Source: Iphione sp. A-MEVVRFRX5 (Eukaryota). From it: DNA of 64,000 nt. The stretch is from the NCBI GenBank assembly GCA_976226885.1, contig OZ320321.1, positions 55,800,001 to 55,864,000 of the forward strand. Reading direction: 5' to 3'. Below, in pieces: positions 9,401 to 41,538 of this stretch (positions within the stretch are counted from its first letter, which is position 1; each line of letters opens with the position of its first letter). The notes beneath the pieces were generated by a model. It was not told the origin of the DNA. It did not search any database and worked only from the letters and a program-made list of their open reading frames with translations. The translations under genes were made by a program, and so were the position numbers.

Positions 9401-10078
9401 TGCGAAACTGTGCTGTCAAATTGTTCTTTTTTTATGTGTATTCCTACCCAGTTAAACATTAAGCGGACTCACTTCCTCGGAATAGTGAAAAGGGATTTAA
9501 GACAGACTAATAAGAGTGTTGTCACTTTCGCACCGAGCATTTACACCACTTTCATCAGTATGAAAATATTGAAGCATATTTCGATAGTTAAAACATCTTT
9601 GTATCAGGGAAATGTATTGGGGAATTGCATATTTTCGGATATTGAGTGTTGGGAGTATCTTTTGATTGATGTTCCCAAAGAATAATTTGAAGGAAGCTTA
9701 AGGTACCTTCATACTAAGAATGAAGAATGCATTGCATGGAGAGGTATTGTTGCAGTATATTATCACGAAAGAATCTTTTTTAAATAGTGCACGTTTGGGA
9801 AGATCACCAAAGTGCAAGATCGTATTGATGTGTGATTGTGACGCATACTTGTATTGAGCCAGGGCTCATATTCAGACAAATAATTTTAACAATACATGTA
9901 TTGTCTACGGCACAGGTAGTGCCAATATATTTGTCTTTTAATATTCTTTTTTCGTTCATCCTGCATTGTAGACTTTGAGAGGAGGTGCGGTGGCGACTAC
10001 TCGTTAACAGAAATCACTTGACACGGTAGGAGACAAGACAATAAACCTTTTCTCGGTCTTCGCCGTACTCCACCAGCC

Positions 10079-12016
10079 ATGTCGAGGGACGTTGATACGA
10101 ACATAGATCGAGCCCTGTGTCTCTCTCACACCTTCCATCTCGTGGTGGGAGCCGGTCGGGCGGCGCTCTTTCCCTTCCTCTCCTTGTACCTGCGTCTGCT
10201 CGGCTTGTCGGGCACCCAGACCGGTCTGCTGCTGGGAGCCCGCGCCTTCATCAGCGCCTGCTCGGCCCCCGTCTGGACGGCCTGCGCCAAGGGCTTCAAC
10301 AAGAAGCGCATCGTTCTCTTACTCTCGCTCTTCACCTCGATGAGCATGTACCTCTTCATCTGCCTCATCCCGCCCGTCGACCCGCGCATCCCGCTCATGT
10401 TCTGTGGGATCGGCCTCAAGAACGGCTCGGAGCTACTGGACCGGCCTGCGTTCCATGGCACCGTCAACACCAGCGTCAGCAGCAGTCCGCACGGCAACCT
10501 CACCGGCTCGACAGGCGCCATTGTGGACGTGACCAGGTTACCTAACGGGACGAGGCCAGCTTCAGCCTGGCCCTCATCGGCGACTAGCTCCATGAAGCCC
10601 TCGTCCACGTCAACCACGACGACCTCGAGTACGAGCACGACCACTGCCACCACCACTACTACCACCACCTCTGCCACCACCACTACCACAGCAGCAAGCA
10701 CCACCACCACCACCACGAGAAGTAGAACGGCAGTCGAAGATAATAGGAGACACCATGCAAGTGGGACGAGTTCGGAGACAAACCGCCAAGAACTGGTGGA
10801 CTTGCTGCAGAATCTTCTGCCCGGTGAGGATTTCAGCCGTTTCTCCGCGGAGGAGTTGGAGAGCCTGGCGCGGGAGTTGATCCAGACGGCGGCCGACGAG
10901 AGTCCCTCCCGCCACCGACGCAATGTGCTGGAGGACGTGAGATCCAAGTGGCACGACATCTCCGTCCGTTTCGACTTGGCCGAGTACCAGACGTTCGTCT
11001 TCCTGCTGGTGGTGGTGATCATAGGGGAACTGCTGGCCAGTCCAAGTGATAAGCTGGCTGACGACTGTTGGTTCGAGTACCTGGACATCCTGGATTGTCT
11101 GGAGAAGTACGGGGGGCACAGGCTCTGGCGCACGGTGGGCTACGTGGTGGTGCCCACCATGGTGACGGCCCTAGTCGACCATACGGCCTGCCTTCTGCCT
11201 CTGGGCATCAACCACTTCCTCATCCACTTCTTCGTCTTCGCTGTCCTCATGGCCGTCGCCTTCCTGCTGGGGCTCTGCTACCCTGTCAGTCAACACAAGC
11301 AGACCCCCAAACGCACGCGCCTCAGTAAAGGCCTGCGCGTGCTATGCGCCGACGTGCATGCCTTCTCCATGACCTTCACCATGGTGGTGGTGGGCGCCGC
11401 CTCCTCCGTCGCCTCCATCTTCCTCTTCTGGCGGGTGCAGGACGTGGGCGGGGTGGAGCTGGTCATGGGGGTGGCCATCGCCGCCTCGGCCGGCGCCCAG
11501 TTCGTCATTCGCCTCATCCACCAGGGCCTCGTCGTCCGCCTCACGCCGGTGGGCACCATCTCGCTGGGCCTGCTCCTCTACGGCGGCATGCTCGTCTTCT
11601 ACGCCTTCCTTTGGTCGCCCTGGCTCGTCGTCGCCGGCGAGGTCTTCCACGGCCTGAGCCTCACGCTCATCTGGTCGGCCTTGCAGGGCTACCCCGACTT
11701 CCGCATCAACCCGTTCGTCATGGACCGGAGCGGCTTCGCCCTCGTCAACTTCCTCTTCACCGGCGTCGGCATGGCGGCGGGCAGCATGGCGGCCGGCATC
11801 CTCTACGACCAGCTCGGCCACATGGTGCTCTTCCTCGGGGCGGGCGGCCTCGTCTTCGTGTGGATGGTGATGTTTGTCGTCCTCCAGAAGCTCGTCAGCA
11901 AGAAGAAGAAAGTGCGCTACGCCAAGCTCTTGCAGGACGAGAACCCGGACGACAGCGACGAGTCGGTGGTCTACGAAGATGACTGGCTGGAGGTGGCCAT
12001 GAAGAGAGACCGGTGA
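10079..12016 (+). CDS. MFSD6L: Major facilitator superfamily domain-containing 6-like transporter, intronless CDS, 645 aa
   Basis: N-terminus (IDRALCLSHTFHLVVGAGRAALFPFLSLYLRLLGL...APVW..CAK.FNKKR) and C-terminus (YAKLL...EDDWLEVAM) resemble vertebrate MFSD6L from memory. About 12 hydrophobic segments, a large loop after TM3 and GC-rich third codon positions. Likely 5'-UTR acceptor ttgtag at ~9971. Confidence 0.9.
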   Translation: MSRDVDTNIDRALCLSHTFHLVVGAGRAALFPFLSLYLRLLGLSGTQTGLLLGARAFISACSAPVWTACAKGFNKKRIVLLLSLFTSMSMYLFICLIPPVDPRIPLMFCGIGLKNGSELLDRPAFHGTVNTSVSSSPHGNLTGSTGAIVDVTRLPNGTRPASAWPSSATSSMKPSSTSTTTTSSTSTTTATTTTTTTSATTTTTAASTTTTTTRSRTAVEDNRRHHASGTSSETNRQELVDLLQNLLPGEDFSRFSAEELESLARELIQTAADESPSRHRRNVLEDVRSKWHDISVRFDLAEYQTFVFLLVVVIIGELLASPSDKLADDCWFEYLDILDCLEKYGGHRLWRTVGYVVVPTMVTALVDHTACLLPLGINHFLIHFFVFAVLMAVAFLLGLCYPVSQHKQTPKRTRLSKGLRVLCADVHAFSMTFTMVVVGAASSVASIFLFWRVQDVGGVELVMGVAIAASAGAQFVIRLIHQGLVVRLTPVGTISLGLLLYGGMLVFYAFLWSPWLVVAGEVFHGLSLTLIWSALQGYPDFRINPFVMDRSGFALVNFLFTGVGMAAGSMAAGILYDQLGHMVLFLGAGGLVFVWMVMFVVLQKLVSKKKKVRYAKLLQDENPDDSDESVVYEDDWLEVAMKRDR

Positions 12017-21279: not shown

Positions 21280-21735
21280 TTAACCCTTCGGGAAAATGGT
21301 ACAAAGGGCTATAATAATGATGACCAGATAGGCACAGAAGAAAAGCCTATCCAGGACGAGAGCGACGATTCGCCACTCCATCATCACCTTGGCGATGGCG
21401 TCCTTCTCTTGTAGACGGGCCATAAAGGATCGCAGGGCCCTGCGGATCTCCTTCACCTCGCTCTCCATGGCCACGTCGTGGATAGGAGAGCGGTCGGGGG
21501 TCTGGTAACGGGCCTGTACAGGGCTGTCCGCCCGGTGGTTGTTCGCCGACGGAGGCTCCCACTTGTTATAGGGGAGAATGGGGGATTTGATCTTGAGCCG
21601 CTGCTTCTCCTTGCCGGACTTTCGCCGAGAGTCTATGCTAATGGTGTGGTGCTCCATCCGACGCTCCCCCTCCTTGCTAAACTTGGGAAAGTCACCACGC
21701 ATGAACACAAAGCGCGCCAAACCATCTATAAAAAC
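21280..21735 (-). CDS. nAChR module A, terminal exon (M3-M4 cytoplasmic loop, MA helix, M4; VFIDGLARFVFM...EWRIVALVLDRLFFCAYLVIIIIALCTIFPKG*)
   Basis: Acceptor ttcag, phase 0; 456 nt to TAA. Contains the EWRxVAxVxDR M4-preceding motif of nAChRs. Confidence 0.93.
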   Translation of the reverse strand, partial: VFIDGLARFVFMRGDFPKFSKEGERRMEHHTISIDSRRKSGKEKQRLKIKSPILPYNKWEPPSANNHRADSPVQARYQTPDRSPIHDVAMESEVKEIRRALRSFMARLQEKDAIAKVMMEWRIVALVLDRLFFCAYLVIIIIALCTIFPKG

Positions 21736-21983
21736 CTGAAATATTCACAAAAACACAGGCCAGTTTTAGACTTCAGCCACATGAACATGTTATATTTGAA
21801 AGTCACGATCCGAGAATTCGAAATTTGTGTATTTCCCTCGGATTACACTGGCCAAAGCAAAGTTCCCACCCCACCGCCAAGAAAGTTGATTGAAAACTGA
21901 TAGTTGAAAAGAAACACTTTGCTTTAAATAACCGACTTCGATTCTAGGTCCACCACAACGAACTGCAGACTGGTGATGCGTAC

Positions 21984-22102
21984 CTTTTTCATACACATTG
22001 GTACTCGTGTGCGCTTGTCCCCCCGGAAGTAGAGATTGATAACGACGACCGACAGGAAGGTGGATAGAGTTATGATAACCATGTTGAGCCCAAAGTAGGC
22101 AC
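21984..22102 (-). CDS. nAChR module A, M3 exon (GAYFGLNMVIITLSTFLSVVVINLYFRGDKRTRVPMCMKK)
   Basis: tttgtag acceptor and AAG|gtacgc donor; 119 nt, the same length and phases as the module B M3 exon. Confidence 0.93.
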
Positions 22103-23042
22103 CTACAAATTGATGGAAAGTCAGTTTGCATAGGGGCAGGATCTGAGCACTTATTATAAAACATCAGTCCAGCACATAAAAGCACAAGTTAGTTCCTGTT
22201 TAATCTTAAGATTACACATGTACTGTCTTTGTAAAATTTGGCCTTGCTGTCCCATAACAAAGTCACCTGAAATTAGACACATTCCCTAGGTAAAATCACG
22301 GCCGAGTTGTGAGAGGATCGAACAAGACGTCACAGCTGGCTGGTTCCACAGCTTAACACATCTACACCACCGACTAACGACGGAGCATACTTAAATAGAA
22401 GTACACATTATGTTCCACCAAGATTACGATATGATATATCTCAATGTTCGGACACTCTATGTTTGTTTTAGTTCTTCCACACACACGGGATGACAGAATG
22501 GCTTCATTTCTTGAGAGGATCTAATCGGCAGCATGCTAAAGGGAGGAGTCGTCTTTACAAGTCTACCTGCGTAGGGTGTATATCAGGTAACAATTATGTT
22601 AAACTGTTAAAAGAAATCTCATGAAATGCCCTTAAAATGGCAAGATACTGAGTAAGTCCCCGTGAGCCTCTCAGACTTCTCGTTAGGTGAAGTCGGTCAA
22701 CTCTGAGCACTGTGCATATTTCTCGTGTGAGGGTATCTTTTTCGGTCAAATACATGTACATATTTTTTTTAAAGAACATGCAGAAACACTCCATCGACAA
22801 TTTATATAGGTTTAAACAGTGCAATCATCCTGCATAAAAATCAAAGGTGATCCAAATAACAACGCGGTTTCCTCACATGGTTGATATTCCTGAAACTGAC
22901 AGTAATACCCTAGAAGAATTAAGCATTTCCGCTTCCGCCAGACAATAGCAGAAGCGTACGGTTTTAAAGATCCAATACCATTATGCGACTAACGTTTTTT
23001 TCCGTTTTAAACTGGCAGAAGCCCATTGAGAGTATAACTCAC

Positions 23043-23129
23043 CTATTAGAGGCACAGAAGATGATGCCGGTGGGGTTGAGTCTGATAAGATTCGCAGCAA
23101 CAGAAAGAATGCTACGAAAATGTTCATAC
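23043..23129 (-). CDS. nAChR module A, M2 pore exon (GMNIFVAFFLLLRILSDSTPPASSSVPLIG)
   Basis: tatgcag acceptor and TAG|gtgagt donor; 87 nt, phase 1/1. Confidence 0.93.
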
Positions 23130-23512
23130 CTGCATAAAAGTCATAACGAAGAAGAGACTCCGAGTTAAGGGGCGTCCGCATGTCCGTAACAGTCCATGCT
23201 ATAGGGTGATTGCAGCAACCGAGATTCATCATAGCCATAACATTTGAAATAGGGTTAACTGTTATGTACTATATAGTGACTTATTACATTTTATTGAAAC
23301 AGGATACAGAAGAACATGGAAATGTTTATGTTTACGTTAAAGAGAGGCGCTGATACTTATTGACAGTGACTATATGCTGGGATAAGTTCAGTGAAATGTC
23401 ATAGGATAATTCACTGTAAAATATTCAGATGCAGCATTCATATTAAACATTGTACTCTTGCTCTTGTCGTTAGAGCTATATAATCAAATGACTGTACACT
23501 GGAATTGCTCAC

Positions 23513-23967
23513 CTAGGATCATCTTAGCGGACGACTCTGGAGGTAGCCAGAATATGACTAGCGTGATGGAGGAAAGAAGAACACAGGGCAAGATGAGGAT
23601 ATAGCTGTAGAAGGCCCCCATCCTCTTGACCTTCATTGTGAAGGTTAGGTCAATATAGGGCTCATCACAACAGGGGTACCTCTTGACGTTCCTGACAGCT
23701 GGGTGTTCAACCAACACCCACTCGTTGCTCTCGATATAATCATTGACGTCCACCTGATCCAGGCCATCATAAAAGTTCAGATCCACTTTGTATCCATCGT
23801 AAGTCCAAGATCCGAATTTCATGTGGCACGTTTGCTCATCAAAAGGAAAGTGTGTGATGTCGATGCTACAGGTACTCTTGTAGATGCCCATAGGGATCCA
23901 GAGAACCTGGCCGTCTTTGTCGACCACAGCTAGTGCTTCGCGCTTCTCGGTTAAACGAATGTCAGCA
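23513..23967 (-). CDS. nAChR module A, Cys-loop/loop B/loop C/M1 exon (CSIDITHFPFDEQTC; FGSWTYDG; YPCCDEPY; ...LPPESSAKMILG)
   Basis: gtacag acceptor and TAG|gtgagc donor; 455 nt, identical in size to the module B exon. Vicinal CC in loop C marks an alpha-type subunit. Confidence 0.95.
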
Positions 23968-24563
23968 CTGTACACAAGAAAGGCATATAGTGACTTGTCA
24001 CAGTTTTCAGAACAGCCACTGGACAAAGATGGTACATGTAGATGCAAAGCAAATTCTGGTGTGAAATAGAGAACTAAGGAAATGGCTTCCGTGAGGTAAA
24101 TAAGACACAGGGCCAGGCAACCTGGCATTACAAAATACGACAACTTTCTTTCACTGCCAAATGATTGAATGCTGAAATTGTTTTTTGGAACACAGACGTT
24201 AGAAAATGCGACAATCTCTCTTTGAGTGCCAAGCCGTGAGACATACACTTTTTGCACATGAGATAAATCAGAATAATTGATCCTATCGCTGGTAGGTCTG
24301 CAGCTAGGAAAGATACACGGATCTGCGTAGCAATCAGGACATCCTATCTTTCCTTGAGGGAAACCATACATTTAACGTCACAGAGAAGTTTCTGTCAACA
24401 TTTGGTGAAGATATAATCAAGAACACTTTTAGGGCGGACAGTGCATAAGCCTCCCAGCGATAGGTAAAATATATTCTACCACAGCCTTCTAAGTACAAGT
24501 ATCAATATCTGAGACTTCGTTATTGATACCTTATACATGTAGTTGCGTTCTCATCGTACTTAC

Positions 24564-24673
24564 TAGTTATAGAGAACTATATCTGGCGTCCAAATATGAT
24601 CGGACGGCACCCGTACATGATCCACTCCTCCAAAGTCTTCAGGATTCCAACGAAGGAGGATGTCGTTCCATGT
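24564..24673 (-). CDS. nAChR module A, first exon of the module ([37 protein letters not shown])
   Basis: ctttcttag acceptor (phase 0) and CTA|gtaagt donor; 110 nt; loop A WxPDIVLYN motif. Not in the ORF track and was found by reading the - strand. Confidence 0.93.
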
Positions 24674-30706: not shown

Positions 30707-31153
30707 TCACGCCTTGGGGAAAATGGTTGCCAGGGAAACAATAATCGTACACAGGTACATAAAGAAGAAAAGCCGGTCTAATACTCTCGCGACTATTCTC
30801 CACTCTTTTGCAACTTTCCCTTGAGCGTCCTTGTCATTTAATCGATTTATAAATGTCCGGAGGATCCGTCTGATTTCTTTAATGTCATTTTCTATGGCTT
30901 GATTATGCAAAGGAGAATAGTCCGGTGTGGCGTGGGACCGAGAAGACGGCCCACCGTCCCTGTAGTCAAACACAGGCGCTTGGAATTTGTTGTACGGAAG
31001 GTCTTTACACTTGATCTTTGCTTTGCGATCTTTGCTGTGTTTACTGTGAGCCCCGTCTAGGCTCAAGGTGTGATGTTCTTGCCGGGAGACCTCGTTGTCG
31101 GTTACGACCTCACTGCGCATGCACAGGATGCGAGCGAGGCCATCTACCATCAC
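30707..31153 (-). CDS. nAChR module B, terminal exon (VMVDGLARILCM...EWRIVARVLDRLFFFMYLCTIIVSLATIFPKA*)
   Basis: atttccag acceptor, phase 0; 447 nt to TGA; M4 motif; homologous to 21280-21735. Confidence 0.95.
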   Translation of the reverse strand: MMVDGLARILCMRSEVVTDNEVSRQEHHTLSLDGAHSKHSKDRKAKIKCKDLPYNKFQAPVFDYRDGGPSSRSHATPDYSPLHNQAIENDIKEIRRILRTFINRLNDKDAQGKVAKEWRIVARVLDRLFFFMYLCTIIVSLATIFPKA

Positions 31154-31551
31154 CTGGAAATACGAAACCAAATGACATAAGTGTCTCAGTGTACAAACAC
31201 GTATATATATAAAATAAATATGCGTGCGCACGTGTACACATGTGCGACCGGAAGCGCATTCGTGCAAGCGCGTACGTGTACACGTAGACCTACTGACCTT
31301 GACGGATCTGACCCCAAAGGCATACATTTCCGTGGAACTCAAATCCGTGTTCAATGTCAGATTCTTGTGCAAGATTTTAGTCAGTTAAGTGTATCACCAA
31401 ATGAATCTGGAGAGAGATACCTCGCAATACACACCACTAGTTGGAACGTTGCAATTAGAGTTCTTCATGTCTGGTTACTTTAAACAGCCAATATAAATAC
31501 TTGTACGCACGTATGTAATTGTAAAATGTGTACATGTAGCAATAAACTTAC

Positions 31552-31670
31552 CCGTTTGAGCCACTTCGGCACTCGGCTACGTTTGTCACCTCTAAAGTAG
31601 AGGTTTATCACGATGACGGATAAGAACGTCGAGAGTGTAATAAGAATCATATTTAAACAAAAGTATGCCC
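31552..31670 (-). CDS. nAChR module B, M3 exon (GAYFCLNMILITLSTFLSVIVINLYFRGDKRSRVPKWLKR)
   Basis: ttcatttcag acceptor and CGG|gtaagt donor; 119 nt. Confidence 0.94.
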
Positions 31671-33151
31671 CTGAAATGAAGAGAAGAGCACGTCAGGGGA
31701 TTACACAGAAAGCATCATATCACATCTAAATCAAGGCATATAGTTCTACGACTTGCATTCTGTGTAAACTTGACATAGCTGCATATGATTTCAGTAATTA
31801 CATATTCACTTATTTCTTTTGGGTACACTTATTGTCGCTCATGCTCTGATATACTTCAGGGCTTTTCAAACGCTAAGGGTGAAGATATATTTACGAATGA
31901 ACTTAAGAAATTTGGGAGCACGCATTTAAAGCTACATGAATGTATATAAGTCGTCACCTCCTACCAGACAAAAAGAAAGGCAAATTCAAAGTAGGCGAGG
32001 GGGTACCGGGAATGGCTTGTCTTTGGTATACTTTACGTAAAAAACGGAGGACACCAAGCACAGACATGGAACTTGGTATGGAAATGGGAGAAAAATGATC
32101 GAAACATTTCGCCTGCAATATTTGGTCCTAATGGAAGCAATGTGAACCAATCGAAACGGGGGTCACAGAAACATATCCATATATATATATGTATCACAAA
32201 TTAGGTGATCTAATATGAAATATAAACCTGTGCACCGATGTCCCCACTTTCACCCTTTGCTATGAAATACTTGCCGGTGGACGCCTCCAAGCAACCTTGT
32301 CGTGTCAGGAACACAGTCGAGGAAGCTACCTGGATGTTACTACAGTGCTGACCGTTCGTACCATTACCATTTAAAGGACACTTTCCGACTAATTTGGTCC
32401 GAAAATAGACCTGTTGTTTTGCACAAAATAGCCACAATTTTTTTTCATGTCACCTGTTATACTGCCTCAGACGTGGCGTGTGCATCCTGTTGCATTATTA
32501 GGTTTTCCTCCTATTCGAAGTTTCTGTTGGCTCGTCTCAATTTTGATGATATAAATTTTGTCCGAACCCGCCGTCTTTCCAAGAAGCTGACTCAGCCACT
32601 CAAGTCTGCTGCACTTATGGAGTTTCAGAATTTGTATGCTCTCTTTACATTCACATATCCGTATGCCGCATACAGAATAGACCTGGGTTATCCATGGATC
32701 TCCCCAGGTATAATTCGCAATGCACACAAGTGAAAAATATCACTTCTAAATTATATCGTGGGAAATGACACCATAATTTCCAATTGGTATCTGATGTTTT
32801 GAAATGTATGCTATAAAAGTGTGATAAGAAATAGTGACACCCCATGCGCTGAGCAGTGTGGCAATTGCTACCTTAGGTGGTTAGGACTATCCCTTCAGCA
32901 AACAAATATACCCTAACGGAGGGATAGGGGAAGCACACGGGATAGTATTTCAGTGTGCATAGAAGTGAATATGTTATCATCTAGTTTCAGAAAAAAGTAT
33001 ATATTTCCCAGTAATGGTTTCCAAATAATGTCATCATGCGTGCGCTTCTGCTTGACTGAGAAAAGGGTCATCGTTAAGATTTAAATGAAACGTTCCAACG
33101 GAAAGGGCAAAAATAATGAAGTTATTATGGACGTCGTAAACCCGTTCCTAC

Positions 33152-33238
33152 CTATGAGCGGCACGGAAGAGGCGGCGGGTGGCGTAGAGTCCGCAAGTAG
33201 TAGGAGCAACAAGAAAAATGCCACAAATATGTTCATAC
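33152..33238 (-). CDS. nAChR module B, M2 pore exon variant b (GMNIFVAFFLLLLLLADSTPPAASSVPLIG)
   Basis: ctctttacacccag acceptor and TAG|gtagga donor; 87 nt, phase 1/1, no stops. Absent from the ORF track. Confidence 0.9.
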
Positions 33239-33467
33239 CTGGGTGTAAAGAGGAGACAACAGGAGAGTGGCGTCAATGAGCACGGTCAAAAAACCAGGCA
33301 TGAAGTAATAGTTAACACAATGAAAGACCTAACAAATGATAAGTAACCAACTAGGGGGGCGACGAACGGTGCACACCCACAGGGCGCTAAAGGTCTCCAC
33401 GGCATGAGGACGAAAAAAAAAAAAGACAGTACAACCCTGCACGCCGCCTACAGCAGCCTGTGTACAC

Positions 33468-33490
33468 GCGGCGGCGGCGGCGGCGGCGGC
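33468..33490. repeat. (GGC)n/(GCC)n trinucleotide run just downstream of the M2a donor
   Basis: gcggcggcggcggcggcggcggc is directly visible. Confidence 0.85.
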
Positions 33491-33523
33491 ACGAGAGGAG
33501 TGGATGAAACCGGGTTGGCCTAC

Positions 33524-33610
33524 CTATGAGAGGTATTGATGACGCGGCCGGAGGTGTAGAATCCGCTAGCAGAAGTAGCAAGACGAAGAAGGCCACAAAT
33601 ATGTTCATAC
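33524..33610 (-). CDS. nAChR module B, M2 pore exon variant a (GMNIFVAFFVLLLLLADSTPPAASSIPLIG)
   Basis: ctctaccctgtgcag acceptor and TAG|gtaggc donor; 87 nt, phase 1/1. Confidence 0.9.
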
Positions 33611-34298
33611 CTGCACAGGGTAGAGGGAGGTAACCAATATGAGGTTGGATCGCAAAATGTTTTTGTTTTGGTTTGGTTTTCGCTTTTCTGTTCTCCTTTC
33701 TCGTTTATTTATTTTTTTTTCAATGAAAAAATGTCTTCAAAGGGGATTTTTTTCACTATTTGTCCCACCACAGGCCCAATTTGGAACATTAATCATAATG
33801 AATATGATTTCGATGTGTAGCAAATACATTCGACGTGTATTGATTAAATTCAGAATATACTAATTATCTTACGGCGAAGGCCTGGACCGAGAACGTGCTT
33901 CTGTTAACACTGATCATTCTCTATTAGTCTGGAAAATGCCATGCTAGTTGCACAAGCATATTGCTATTACTGGATACTGATTGTAAGATTTTATATAAAA
34001 GGTTAATATCTTTTTTGGGTAACTATCAAAATTCAAGGAATTTTTTTCCGCATGGACTTTTGACCGAATGTTTGAAAATTGGAACATAAATTACATGCAA
34101 GGGGGAATGTATATGGACCTAATGGATTGCTTGCTTGATTGGGCTGTACGTATCCAAATTTTTGTCGTGAAAATTTTGTCTATATGAGAAACATAAAAAT
34201 AGTTTCAAACAGTGTAACGTAGGCCCCTAATGTCTTACGTGGATGAGAGAAAAGGTCTCAGAGAAAGGAATGGTATGGCCCTCAGGAGTATAAAGCAG

Positions 34299-34364
34299 GT
34301 CGACATGGGCGTATCACATTGATCTGAACCGGAACCAGATCAAGAAATGTGTCGTCATGCCGAC
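34299..34364 (-). other. 66-nt imperfect RNA hairpin (~23 bp, 9-nt loop) in the intron before the twin M2 exons; pre-miRNA-sized
   Basis: GUCGGCAUG/CAUGUCGAC (9 bp incl. one G-U), CG/CG, CACAU/AUGUG and UGAUCUG/CAGAUCA stems around the loop GUUCCGGUU. Confidence 0.5.
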
Positions 34365-35476
34365 AGCAAACGAAGAAAATAAGTGGCTTGTGAACATATT
34401 ACAATCGAACAACGGCACTACAACACATACCGAAAGGAACGTTTGAGAGACCTCTCGTCGGGTCAATTATCTACTCCAAACAAAGCCCCCGGTTTGAAAT
34501 GCTTTGTGCCCCAGTACATATGCACAAGGTGATTTTGACTCAAATGAAAAAAAATCCCGTGAATATGAAGCAACTCTAGCAGCCGTTGGGTTCAAGTTTT
34601 TCTTCATGCTGGGATAGTGTTGATAATTCTGATATGGAGTGCAGGGGCAGAACCTGGGGTTTACGTACTGCATTTAAGCCGAGGACTCGTTTGCTTGCTA
34701 GGCACAAACTGTGAAGTGTAAGACCGTCGTGCCCTCTCTAGATTGATTCTATGAACACCTCTTCATTTACCGTCCATCAAATTGTTTTATATGGTATAAA
34801 TTCATCTGGCTTTATATTCAGTCGAAATGAATTGAAAGGAAAACTCTATACTACTATTACTTACATAAGACCAACCCGTTCAACCAACGGAGTAGCGTAA
34901 TAACTGAATTCTAAACTACGAATTTTGGTTCATTTCAGGATTTCAGAAGTATTATATCAATACACATATTAATGAAATGATCCGAAATTTACCTATCATT
35001 CATCGTCTTTCTACAAGTTACATAACAGATGTTTTAAGTATCAACTTACGGGCGAAAATGAATCAACCACAGTTGAACTAACTTCAGGGGCAGATTTCCA
35101 GGAATATTATTTTGTAAATAGACCCTTTACTTATTCTTGCAAATTCACTGATGCAATTATGTATCCTGTTTTTGCTTTCTTCGGATAAACAAATTTGTAA
35201 TTATAACTGTTAACATCGATTCCCAGTTGTTTAGTTTCTGAGATAATTTGTTCGCAGTTGATTCATCCTAGGCAGTCGTTTCATCCAAAATCGTAGTTAT
35301 ATCAATTCACAGGCGATATATTCTGATGTTCCTTTGCCTATATGTCAGTTTTCAAGTGGCCAGCCAAGCTAAGTTAAGCTTTACCATGAGAAATACTTAA
35401 ATGTGCGATTTTGGATTGAAAGTCGTGCCCAACGCTCGCCAAGAATGTATACCGTAATAGAAGACACACCACTTAC

Positions 35477-35931
35477 CTAGAATCATTTTGGCCGGTGACT
35501 CTGGTGGGAGCCAGAAGACTACCAGAGTCAATGAGGATAACAGCACACATGGCAATATTAGGATGTAGTTGTAGAAGGCAGCAATACGCTTTAGCTGCAG
35601 GGTGAAAGTCAAATCTGGATATGGCTCCTCACAGCACGGATAATACTTGACGTTCTTCTTGGCCGGATGGCCTAGAAGAGCCCATTCGTTGCTCTCGATG
35701 TAGTCACTGACGTCAACCTGTTCAAGGCCGTCGTAGAAGTCGATGTCGAGCTTAAAGCCATCGTAGGTCCACGAGCCGAACTTGAGGTGACATACTTGTT
35801 CATCGAAGGGGAAGTGGGTGATGTCAATGGAGCAAGTTGATTTGAAGATGGCCATAGGAATCCACAATACAGTGCCATCACTTGACACTACAGCCATAGC
35901 CTCCCGCTGCTCCTTCAGGCGAGTATCGGCA
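35477..35931 (-). CDS. nAChR module B, Cys-loop/loop B/loop C/M1 exon (CSIDITHFPFDEQVC; FGSWTYDG; YYPCCEEPY; ...LPPESPAKMILG)
   Basis: Acceptor aaaacag preceded by a (TC)n tract and TAG|gtaagt donor; 455 nt; alpha-type vicinal cysteines. Confidence 0.96.
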
Positions 35932-35940
35932 CTGTTTTTT

Positions 35941-35944
35941 AGAG

Positions 35945-35989
<45 letters not shown>
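35941..35989. repeat. (GA)n microsatellite, serving as the polypyrimidine tract of the module B large-exon acceptor on the - strand
   Basis: About 24 GA units ending ~8 nt from the acceptor AG. Confidence 0.95.
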
Positions 35990-35992
<3 letters not shown>

Positions 35993-36640: not shown

Positions 36641-36750
36641 TAGTTATATAGAACAATGTCCGGTGTCCATATTTTCGTTGCAGGCACGCGAACGTGATCG
36701 ACCCCGCCGAAGTCCTCAGGATTCCAACGTAGTAGAATATCATTCCACAA
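36641..36750 (-). CDS. nAChR module B, first exon of the module ([37 protein letters not shown])
   Basis: cttttattcag acceptor (phase 0) and CTA|gtacgt donor; 110 nt; loop A motif. Not in the ORF track. Confidence 0.94.
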
Positions 36751-41344: not shown

Positions 41345-41538
41345 ATATCTGCTCCAGACATTCGTTGTTAGGACTTGATTCTTCTCATCCAAATCAAGAA
41401 TCTGAATGAGGGCGAGGCCGTAGCTGACGCGGACCGTCTCAGAAGTGTTGTAGACCGGACGGCCGACAATCCCTACTCTCTCGTAATTCTCGAGCAAATG
41501 CTTGATCAACCGCTTTTCATCGGACATTGCTATTGTCT
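41345..41538 (-). CDS. nAChR N-terminal exon, the only copy found (TIAMSDEKRLIKHLLENYERVGIVGRPVYNTSETVRVSYGLALIQILDLDEKNQVLTTNVWSRY)
   Basis: ttttttcaccatttcag acceptor (phase 1) and TAT|gtaagt donor (phase 0); 194 nt. Contains the RPV, LIQI..DEKNQVLTTNVW (loop D) motifs. In frame with both 36750 and 24673. Confidence 0.95.

What the first reader, a model, noticed from the sequence alone, without database searches (positions are those of the whole stretch)
33152..33610. Tandem duplicated, presumably mutually exclusive M2 pore exons
Seen in sequence: two intact 87-nt phase-1/1 exons 285 nt apart, both with good splice sites and extensive synonymous divergence but only two amino-acid differences: V vs L at M2 position 13' (counting the K of PAK as 0') and I vs V in the M2-M3 loop. 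Established: 13' is pore-lining and is one of the three positions (V13'T) used to convert alpha7 to anion selectivity. Drosophila Dalpha6 duplicates the homologous 87-nt M2 exon (8a/8b/8c). Inference: including both would keep frame but add a second M2 and break topology, so exclusion must be actively enforced. The spacing is too long for simple steric exclusion, and AGs in the intervening intron argue against a distant branch point. With module A this gives three pore variants from one locus.
Basis: partly seen in the sequence, partly recalled or inferred. Interest (0 to 1): 0.75.

Follow-up and report, generated by a model that had tools for sequence, protein, structure and literature searches.

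The report
Two alternative pore exons, ACh-gated channel
A worm-type acetylcholine-gated (probably chloride) channel gene carries two interchangeable copies of the small exon that builds the upper half of its pore; both copies have been kept intact across many related genomes, so the gene almost certainly makes two channel versions, an isoform switch known from insects but apparently not yet described for this receptor family.

Summary
On the minus strand, two 87-nt exons of the same phase (33610-33524, "a"; 33238-33152, "b") lie 285 nt apart. They differ at 18 of 87 bases but at only two residues: V/L at M2 13' and I/V at 29', just before the conserved PLI.

The gene is an alpha-type nicotinic-like subunit with the PAK motif of the spiralian acetylcholine-gated anion channels (the AChRB, Lymnaea type B and SmACC family).

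The pair is not an assembly artefact or a dead copy:
- Five orthologous loci, contigs of three close relatives, the annelid Dimorphilus and the brachiopod Lingula all carry an a/b pair. All but Dimorphilus, whose first exon has F13', keep the V+I versus L+V signature.
- Synonymous sites are saturated while the peptides barely change.

RefSeq isoforms of Lingula and of an Octopus paralog differ only by this exon, and RNA-assembled cephalopod transcripts carry the b form. No RNA run was listed for this species, so one-at-a-time use here is inferred.

How exclusion works here is open. Steric block is excluded in this window, yet one ortholog has only 22 nt between the exons. Introns next to the two exons are far better conserved in close relatives than constitutive coding exons, and both donors are weak, which points to regulated choice.

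The scan noted a similar tandem pair, of loop-A exons, in another nAChR gene of this genome. Verdict: new member of a known kind.

The parts
41345..41524 (-). N-terminal ligand-binding-domain exon (matched part, SDEKRL..WSRY). It is the only copy in the window.
36641..36750 (-). 110-nt ligand-binding-domain exon ([14 protein letters not shown])
35477..35931 (-). 455-nt constitutive exon holding the Cys-loop (C-x13-C), loop C with YPCC, M1, the PAK motif (-2' to 0') and M2 1'-3'. Its donor is GTAAGT.
33611..33657 (-). Intron stretch upstream of exon a that stays alignable in close relatives
   Evidence: contig pieces 33501-33657, 7 differences in 157 nt
33524..33610 (-). M2 exon a (4' to 33'): V13', I29'. 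Donor GTAGGC.
33239..33523 (-). 285-nt intron between the two exons. 33239-33386 and 33501-33523 are nearly invariant in close relatives. 33387-33500, holding a (GCC)n run and a T run, does not align. The last internal AG is at 33330-33329.
33294..33304 (-). Candidate element complementary to the acceptor and first bases of exon b (11 bp with 33242-33232), and in 10 of 11 positions to the same bases of exon a. It is a lead only and is not statistically supported.
33152..33238 (-). M2 exon b (4' to 33'): L13', V29'. Donor GTAGGA.
33083..33151 (-). Intron stretch downstream of exon b that is nearly invariant in close relatives
   Evidence: 33083-33386: 3 mismatches and 8 gap letters in 304 nt
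31552..31670 (-). 119-nt constitutive exon holding the end of the M2-M3 loop and M3
30707..31153 (-). Last exon: intracellular loop, M4 and the stop codon

Best explanation
The gene encodes an alpha-type, nicotinic-like pentameric channel subunit of the spiralian PAK-motif family, whose characterised members are acetylcholine-gated anion channels.

The 87-nt exon that encodes M2 from 4' to the start of the M2-M3 loop exists in two tandem copies. The pre-mRNA most likely includes one copy at a time, giving two subunits that differ only at pore-lining 13' (V or L) and at 29' (I or V), next to the conserved Pro of the gating loop.

Shown:
- Both exons are intact.
- The pair and its two diagnostic residues are conserved across diverged genomes under strong purifying selection.
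- In Lingula and an Octopus paralog, annotated isoforms or RNA-assembled transcripts carry a or b and otherwise match.

Inferred: one-at-a-time use in this species, and a functional difference such as gating, desensitisation or conductance, since 13' lies in the hydrophobic girdle.

For the choice itself, neither reading frame nor geometry can enforce exclusion here. Including both exons, or skipping both, stays in frame. The most likely mechanism (about 0.4) is regulated competition. Both exons have sub-consensus donors, both keep an unusually constrained 5' end (ATGAACATATT..), and their flanking introns are far better conserved than coding sequence. A regulator bound in the inter-exon intron would sit downstream of a and upstream of b, and could therefore act on the two in opposite directions. 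Products with both or neither exon would be non-functional subunits removed at assembly.
For: - Anatomy.
- Family: Pfam Neur_chan_LBD and Neur_chan_memb match. PAK-motif homologues include Biomphalaria 'subunit type B', flatworm ACh-gated chloride channels and Octopus AChRB. The family is described in bioRxiv 10.1101/2025.04.02.646353 and PMC4055736.
- Conservation: the pair is present in L001-L005, Dimorphilus L006 and Lingula L007, and on single contigs of three coded relatives.
- Selection: orthologous a exons and b exons have pS about 0.67 (saturated) with almost invariant peptides.
- Exclusive use elsewhere: Lingula X1 and X2 differ only at 8 positions inside the M2 exon. Octopus X1 and X2 differ at 6 positions there. 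Logan RNA contigs encode full-length b-form proteins.
- Regulation signature: in close relatives, exon b with its flanks has 3 mismatches in 304 nt. The constitutive exons have 33 in 466 and 11 in 128, and their introns stop aligning within a few bases of the exon.
- Donors match the GTRAGT consensus at 3-5 of 6 positions, against 5-6 of 6 for the constitutive exon.
- Codon entropy of the first six codons is 0.52 against 1.71 for the rest, across 12 exons.
Against: - No RNA of this species was available. Both run searches listed no RNA run, and the four runs laid were genomic contigs.
- No exclusion mechanism is demonstrated.
- Predicted folding of the cluster is no better than shuffles, with z of -0.16 and 0.00.
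- Searches for intronic elements complementary to the exon starts gave about the chance number of low-probability hits, at inconsistent positions.
- No intronic block is shared with the more distant orthologues.
- The Dimorphilus gene model joins both exons and Octopus models include skip-both forms, so exclusion may be leaky.
- A YCAY motif excess is not significant.
Confidence: 0.78

Rival explanations
1. Exclusion is enforced by competing RNA base-pairing. A single intronic element (33304-33294) pairs either with the acceptor and first bases of exon b (11 bp) or with the near-identical bases of exon a (10 bp). It hides one acceptor at a time, in the manner of docking-site and selector systems.
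For: - The helix appears in the centroid structure.
- The first 19 nt of the two exons are identical here and are constrained at synonymous sites in all six species.
- L001 has an 8-bp perfect complement of the exon start about 40 nt upstream of its exon b.
- The element lies in the block that is invariant in close relatives.
- Tandem duplication is a known way to create competing selectors (PMC6071210, abstract only, in the listing).
Against: - Duplex energies are not better than dinucleotide shuffles for the window (63 of 100 shuffles are as good for exon a).
- About 34 tests gave only a few hits at 3 of 100 or fewer, close to chance.
- Positions differ between species.
- Regional folds have z about 0.
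- No covariation can be measured, because the close relatives are invariant there.
Confidence: 0.15
2. The two exons are independent cassette exons without strict exclusion. Transcripts with both or neither are made at appreciable levels and are simply non-functional, or act as dominant-negative or regulatory forms.
For: - Including both or skipping both keeps the frame, so NMD cannot remove such products.
- Octopus RefSeq models P0303 and P0305 skip the exon.
- The Dimorphilus model P0125 contains both.
- No enforcing mechanism was found here.
Against: - No annotated or RNA-assembled protein with both exons was seen, apart from the Dimorphilus model, and the evidence behind that model is unknown.
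- In L005 the 22-nt spacer makes joining the two exons physically implausible, so in that lineage exclusion is structural.
- The skip forms may be annotation noise.
Confidence: 0.12
3. One copy is an unused pseudo-exon, or the pair is a haplotype or assembly duplication.
For: No transcript of this species was seen.
Against: - Both copies keep frame, splice sites and peptide across genomes whose synonymous sites are saturated.
- Both lie on single contigs in independent assemblies of other organisms.
- The flanks of the two copies do not align with each other.
Confidence: 0.03

Closest known systems
Insect nAChR alpha6 (Dalpha6) exon 8a/8b/8c
   Same: Tandem, mutually exclusive copies of the exon that encodes part of TM2 of a nicotinic-type subunit (PMC6393475, PMC1919356). 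The duplication is old and conserved. One copy is extremely conserved even at the nucleotide level in close species, as exon b is here.
   Different: It belongs to a different branch of the nicotinic family (cationic, alpha7-like) and to a different phylum. It has three copies that differ at more residues, and it is combined with A-to-I editing. Orthology of the duplication was not tested, and independent origin is likely.
RefSeq isoforms of the Lingula anatina 'alpha-5' gene (X1/X2) and the Octopus 'alpha-3' gene (X1/X2), both PAK-motif AChRB-family genes
   Same: Same family, same exon, and the same two diagnostic changes (V13' to L, I29' to V). The isoforms are otherwise identical. Logan RNA contigs encode the cephalopod b form.
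   Different: The b exon is 84 nt (one codon shorter) in both. In Lingula the order is b then a. On a weakly resolved tree these genes fall in another clade of the family than the window's gene. They exist only as computed annotation. The papers searched do not mention the isoforms.
Sterically enforced exon pairs (alpha-tropomyosin exons 2/3 type)
   Same: In ortholog L005 the two exons are 22 nt apart, so the branch point of the second must lie in or before the first. Dimorphilus has 47 nt between them.
   Different: This does not apply to the window, where the spacer is 285 nt and the AG-free zone is only 88 nt.
Docking-site and selector competing RNA structures (Dscam1, 14-3-3xi, ATE1)
   Same: A tandem exon cluster whose exclusion cannot be explained by frame or spacing. 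One intronic element is complementary to the duplicated start of both exons.
   Different: The pairing has no statistical or comparative support here. No homologous intronic selectors are visible.

Membership tests
Pentameric ligand-gated channel, nicotinic alpha type | Neur_chan_LBD and Neur_chan_memb domains | tested here: met
   PF02931 matches at 3.5e-33 and PF02932 matches in exon 35931-35477. PF02932 also matches in the last exon.
Pentameric ligand-gated channel, nicotinic alpha type | Cys-loop (C-x13-C) and vicinal Cys pair in loop C (YxCC) | tested here: met
   The translation of 35930-35478 holds C-SIDITHFPFDEQV-C and YYPCC.
Spiralian ACh-gated anion channels (AChRB, Lymnaea type B, SmACC) | Pro-Ala(-Lys) at -2' to 0' in place of the cation-channel Glu | tested here: met
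   PESPAK-MILG is present at the end of exon 35931-35477. The motif is defined in bioRxiv 10.1101/2025.04.02.646353 and PMC4055736.
Spiralian ACh-gated anion channels (AChRB, Lymnaea type B, SmACC) | Sequence kinship with characterised members | tested here: met
   Biomphalaria 'subunit type B', Schistosoma and Cryptocotyle ACh-gated chloride channel proteins and the Octopus genes are 60-70% identical in the exon and have near-identical M2.
Spiralian ACh-gated anion channels (AChRB, Lymnaea type B, SmACC) | ACh-gated anion current | not testable with these tools
   This needs expression and recording.
Mutually exclusive exon cluster | Tandem homologous exons of equal length and phase with own splice sites | tested here: met
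Mutually exclusive exon cluster | Both copies maintained by selection | tested here: met
Mutually exclusive exon cluster | Mature transcripts hold exactly one copy | not testable with these tools
   No RNA run was listed for this species. Isoforms and transcripts of Lingula and Octopus, where available, carry only a or only b.
Steric exclusion | Donor-to-branch-point distance too short to splice the inter-exon intron | tested here: not met
   In the window the intron is 285 nt and the branch point is at least about 195 nt from the donor. The feature is met in ortholog L005, which has 22 nt.
Competing RNA structure (docking site and selectors) | Conserved complementary elements of which only one pair can form | tested here: inconclusive
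   There is a candidate 11-bp helix, but it is no better than shuffles, it is not positionally conserved, and the regional fold z is about 0.
U2/U12 incompatibility or frame/NMD policing | U12-type sites on one exon, or exon length not a multiple of 3 | tested here: not met
   All sites are GT-AG of U2 type. Each exon is 87 nt (29 codons), and including both or skipping both stays in frame.

The most novel reading that the evidence does not exclude
The a/b switch (V13'+I29' versus L13'+V29') is a single ancient invention of the spiralian ACh-gated anion channel family. It would predate the split of annelids, brachiopods and molluscs, and then have been retained in some gene lineages and lost in many. 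Lineages would have evolved different ways of keeping the exons exclusive: a 22-nt steric spacer in one, conserved intronic regulators in this genome. That would make it a deep-time natural experiment on how pore residue 13' and the M2-M3 loop tune an inhibitory cholinergic receptor, and on how exclusion mechanisms turn over.
Probability: 0.3. Interest if true: 0.65.

Novelty: new member of a known kind. Interest (0 to 1): 0.5.

Why it matters
Acetylcholine-gated anion channels mediate cholinergic inhibition in molluscs, flatworms and annelids, and are only now being characterised. A conserved, genetically encoded two-state switch in the pore would mean that one gene supplies two kinetically or conductively different inhibitory receptors. 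The switch consists of two conservative changes, at 13' and at 29' next to the gating-loop proline. These are natural variants, easy to test in oocytes, at a position long used in mutagenesis of alpha7.

The cluster is also a compact case of in-frame mutually exclusive exons that neither NMD, exon spacing nor splice-site type can police. A related genome solves the same problem sterically.

Tried and rejected
1. RNA evidence. The look-up of sequencing runs with kind rna on 31400-35900 listed nothing. With kind any on 33100-35940 it listed 14 runs with small shares, none on record as RNA. The four runs laid were genomic contigs of close relatives with no splice joints.
2. Transcript-derived proteins of near relatives. 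The 151-aa exon query returned only genomic read-through ORFs.
3. Conserved intronic blocks shared with L001-L005. None was found beyond a pyrimidine tract.
4. RNA structure. Folds of 33083-33657 and 33140-33390 gave z of -0.16 and 0.00. The inverted-repeat list showed nothing compelling. Duplex scans of exon starts against all three introns in six species gave chance-level results.
5. Rfam on 32800-33900 gave no match, so the intron conservation is not explained by a known RNA gene.
6. Motifs. YCAY is not enriched (188 of 2000 shuffles reach the observed count). GCAUG clusters occur only in L002.
7. Dating the duplication. The tree on the 151-aa exon is poorly resolved, and the exons are too short and too saturated for an exon tree. 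The Octopus and Lineus loci were too long to fetch, and the Owenia locus was withheld.
8. Mollusc orthologue. Patella vulgata has a single a-type exon and no hidden b copy.
9. Rejected outright: assembly artefact, pseudo-exon, U12 incompatibility, NMD policing, and steric exclusion in this window.

Full report
**The observation**

Reading the minus strand shows a constitutive exon ending at 35477 (..W-L-P-P-E-S-P-A-K-M-I-L, then G|gtaagt). Two 87-nt exons follow at 33610-33524 (a) and 33238-33152 (b), and then an exon starting at 31670 that encodes the end of the M2-M3 loop and M3.
- Each 87-nt exon follows an AG with a pyrimidine tract, precedes a GT, and has intron phase 1 at both ends.
- The intron between them is 285 nt.
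- A script counts 18 differences in 87 nt. Fourteen codons differ only synonymously and two change the residue: V/L and I/V.
- With K of PAK as 0', the invariant landmarks G4', A19', D20', P23' and P30'-L-I fall where they do in standard M2 numbering. The changes are therefore at 13' and 29'.
- The sequences flanking the two exons do not align with each other.

One nuance: both donors (GTAGGC, GTAGGA) are weaker than the GTAAGT of the neighbouring constitutive exons.

**The gene**

The remaining exons were located by translation and tblastn:
- 41524-41345, the N-terminal ligand-binding part
- 36750-36641
- 35931-35477, holding the Cys-loop, the YPCC of loop C, M1 and PAK
- the M2 exon a or b
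- 31670-31552, holding M3
- 31153-30707, holding the intracellular loop, M4 and the stop codon

Pfam finds Neur_chan_LBD and Neur_chan_memb.

Homologues with the same ..PPESPAK.. motif and a near-identical M2 occur throughout Spiralia. They include Biomphalaria 'nicotinic receptor subunit type B', flatworm 'acetylcholine-gated chloride channel' proteins and Octopus genes.
- A 2025 preprint names this group the AChRB family. It notes the PAK motif and shows an ACh-gated anion current for one Octopus member.
- The Schistosoma paper defines the Pro-Ala criterion.

The closest named relatives are annelid, so the genome (1.18 Gb) is probably an annelid's.

**The pair is real and old**

Protein hits to the 151-aa exon were mostly gene calls on genomic contigs of other animals. 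I fetched their loci and scanned them.

| Locus | Order and spacing |
|---|---|
| L001 | a, 121 nt, b |
| L002 | a, 936 nt, b |
| L003 | a, 420 nt, b |
| L004 | a, 1194 nt, b |
| L005 | b, 22 nt, a |
| L006 (Dimorphilus gyrociliatus) | F13'/I exon, 47 nt, L13'/V exon |
| L007 (Lingula anatina) | 84-nt b, 689 nt, a |

- L001-L005 are 83-93% identical to the window in the large exon.
- In all but Dimorphilus, one copy has V13' with I29' and the other has L13' with V29'.
- Genomic contigs of three coded organisms closely related to the window's species also span both exons on one contig.
- Among the six closest genomes, synonymous sites of orthologous exons are saturated (pS about 0.67) while the peptides are almost invariant.

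A copy that is never translated would not survive this, and an assembly duplication would not recur in independent assemblies. The limpet Patella vulgata has only an a-type exon. In this genome only this gene has the pair.

**Evidence for one-at-a-time use**

No RNA run was listed for this species, and the runs that hold parts of the stretch are DNA. Direct proof here is therefore missing. In other members of the family:
- Lingula RefSeq isoforms X1 and X2 differ only at eight positions inside this exon.
- Octopus sinensis and O. bimaculoides isoforms X1 and X2 of a paralogous PAK gene differ only at six positions there, again including V13'L and I29'V.
- Four full-length proteins predicted from 2.1-2.6-kb Logan contigs carry the b form. 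These contigs must be spliced RNA.
- No model has both exons except the Dimorphilus gene prediction. Two Octopus models skip the exon.

**How the choice could be made**

Including both exons, or neither, keeps the frame, so nonsense-mediated decay cannot police it. All sites are U2-type GT-AG.

Steric exclusion is impossible in this window. The last internal AG is 88 nt upstream of exon b, so its branch point lies at least about 195 nt from exon a's donor. L005 is a contrast: only 22 nt separate the exons, so the second exon's branch point must sit in or before the first. That is a classical steric design.

Three features of the window's cluster are typical of regulated alternative exons:
1. 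In close relatives, exon b with 148 nt of upstream and 69 nt of downstream intron shows 3 mismatches and a few 1-2-nt indels in 304 nt. Exon a with its flanks shows 7 differences in 157 nt. The constitutive exons show 33 in 466 and 11 in 128, and their introns become unalignable within a few bases of the splice sites.
2. Both alternative donors are sub-consensus in nearly every species, while the constitutive donor upstream is near-consensus.
3. The first six codons of both exons (ATGAACATATT..) are constrained at synonymous sites in all twelve exons of six species. That includes the Ile codon ATA in 12 of 12. The remaining codons are scrambled.

I take regulated competition to be the most likely mechanism. 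Factors bound in the inter-exon intron would sit downstream of a and upstream of b, and so could act on the two in opposite directions. This is an inference.

The RNA-pairing alternative has one concrete candidate: 33304-33294 pairs with the acceptor and start of exon b, and almost as well with exon a. It fails every control available. Regional folds have z about 0. Duplex energies are no better than shuffles, positions are inconsistent across species, and no blocks are shared with distant orthologues. Rfam finds nothing in the conserved intron.

**Comparison with what is known**

The kind is known. Insect nAChR alpha6 has mutually exclusive exons 8a/8b/8c that encode part of TM2. [quoted passage not shown]

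The present case is the same trick in a different branch of the family (anion-type, spiralian), with two copies and a minimal two-residue difference. It is visible in RefSeq annotation of Lingula and Octopus. None of the papers I could search or read on this family or on lophotrochozoan nAChRs mentions it.

Whether the spiralian pairs share one origin is unresolved:
- The shared V13'L and I29'V signature, and the shared 84-nt b exon of Lingula and Octopus, argue for common descent.
- Different exon order, different gene clades on a weak tree and free variation of 13' and 29' among single-exon paralogues argue for caution.

**Verdict**

This is a real, conserved pair of alternative M2 exons and a new member of a known kind. 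Confidence that the gene makes two isoforms, one exon at a time, is about 0.78. Confidence in any particular exclusion mechanism is low.

Noticed in passing
window 21283-24670 (minus strand): A second block, 'module A', lies downstream of the gene's stop codon. It holds a [10 protein letters not shown] exon (24670-24566), a large exon with SAK (23966-23514), a single b-like M2 exon with R16' (23130-23041), M3 (22100-21987) and a last exon (21735-21283). No copy of the N-terminal exon lies between 30707 and 24670, even at tblastn E up to 1000. The annotated look-alikes in Lamellibrachia and Paralvinella also lack an N-terminus. Module A may therefore be an alternative 3' block that shares the 5' exons, not a separate gene. 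L004 keeps the same arrangement.
   Followed up: partly
L005:11118-11313: In this ortholog the order is reversed (b then a) and only 22 nt separate the exons. That is too short to be an intron, so exclusion is structural there.
   Followed up: partly
L006:5144-5364 (Dimorphilus gyrociliatus, DgyrCDS7085): The deposited gene model splices both M2 exons together across a 47-nt interval and adds six residues from the upstream intron. This is probably a mis-prediction of an alternative exon pair.
   Followed up: no
G000:C19:56478332-56478415 (+), about 614 kb beyond the window: Another M2 exon of the same family lies here, 89% identical to exon b at the peptide level. It appears to be single.
   Followed up: no
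window 33387-33500: A (GCC)n run (about 33490-33468) and a T run (about 33424-33413) lie inside the inter-exon intron. They are the only part of that intron that does not align with close relatives.
   Followed up: no
window 35945-35990: A long (CT)n microsatellite lies directly upstream of the acceptor of the 455-nt exon and forms its pyrimidine tract.
   Followed up: no
L003:3169-8766: A retroelement (reverse transcriptase, integrase-like ORFs) is inserted in the intron between the large exon and exon a. It stretches that intron to 9.1 kb without disturbing the exon pair.
   Followed up: no
window 35477-35500 and 33524-33610: The pore is unusual beyond PAK: I2', N6' and V9' replace the usual polar 2' and 6' and the Leu at 9'. 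These residues are shared by the whole family.
   Followed up: no
window 10001-12000: One 2-kb bin has 62% G+C, against about 42% elsewhere in the window.
   Followed up: no
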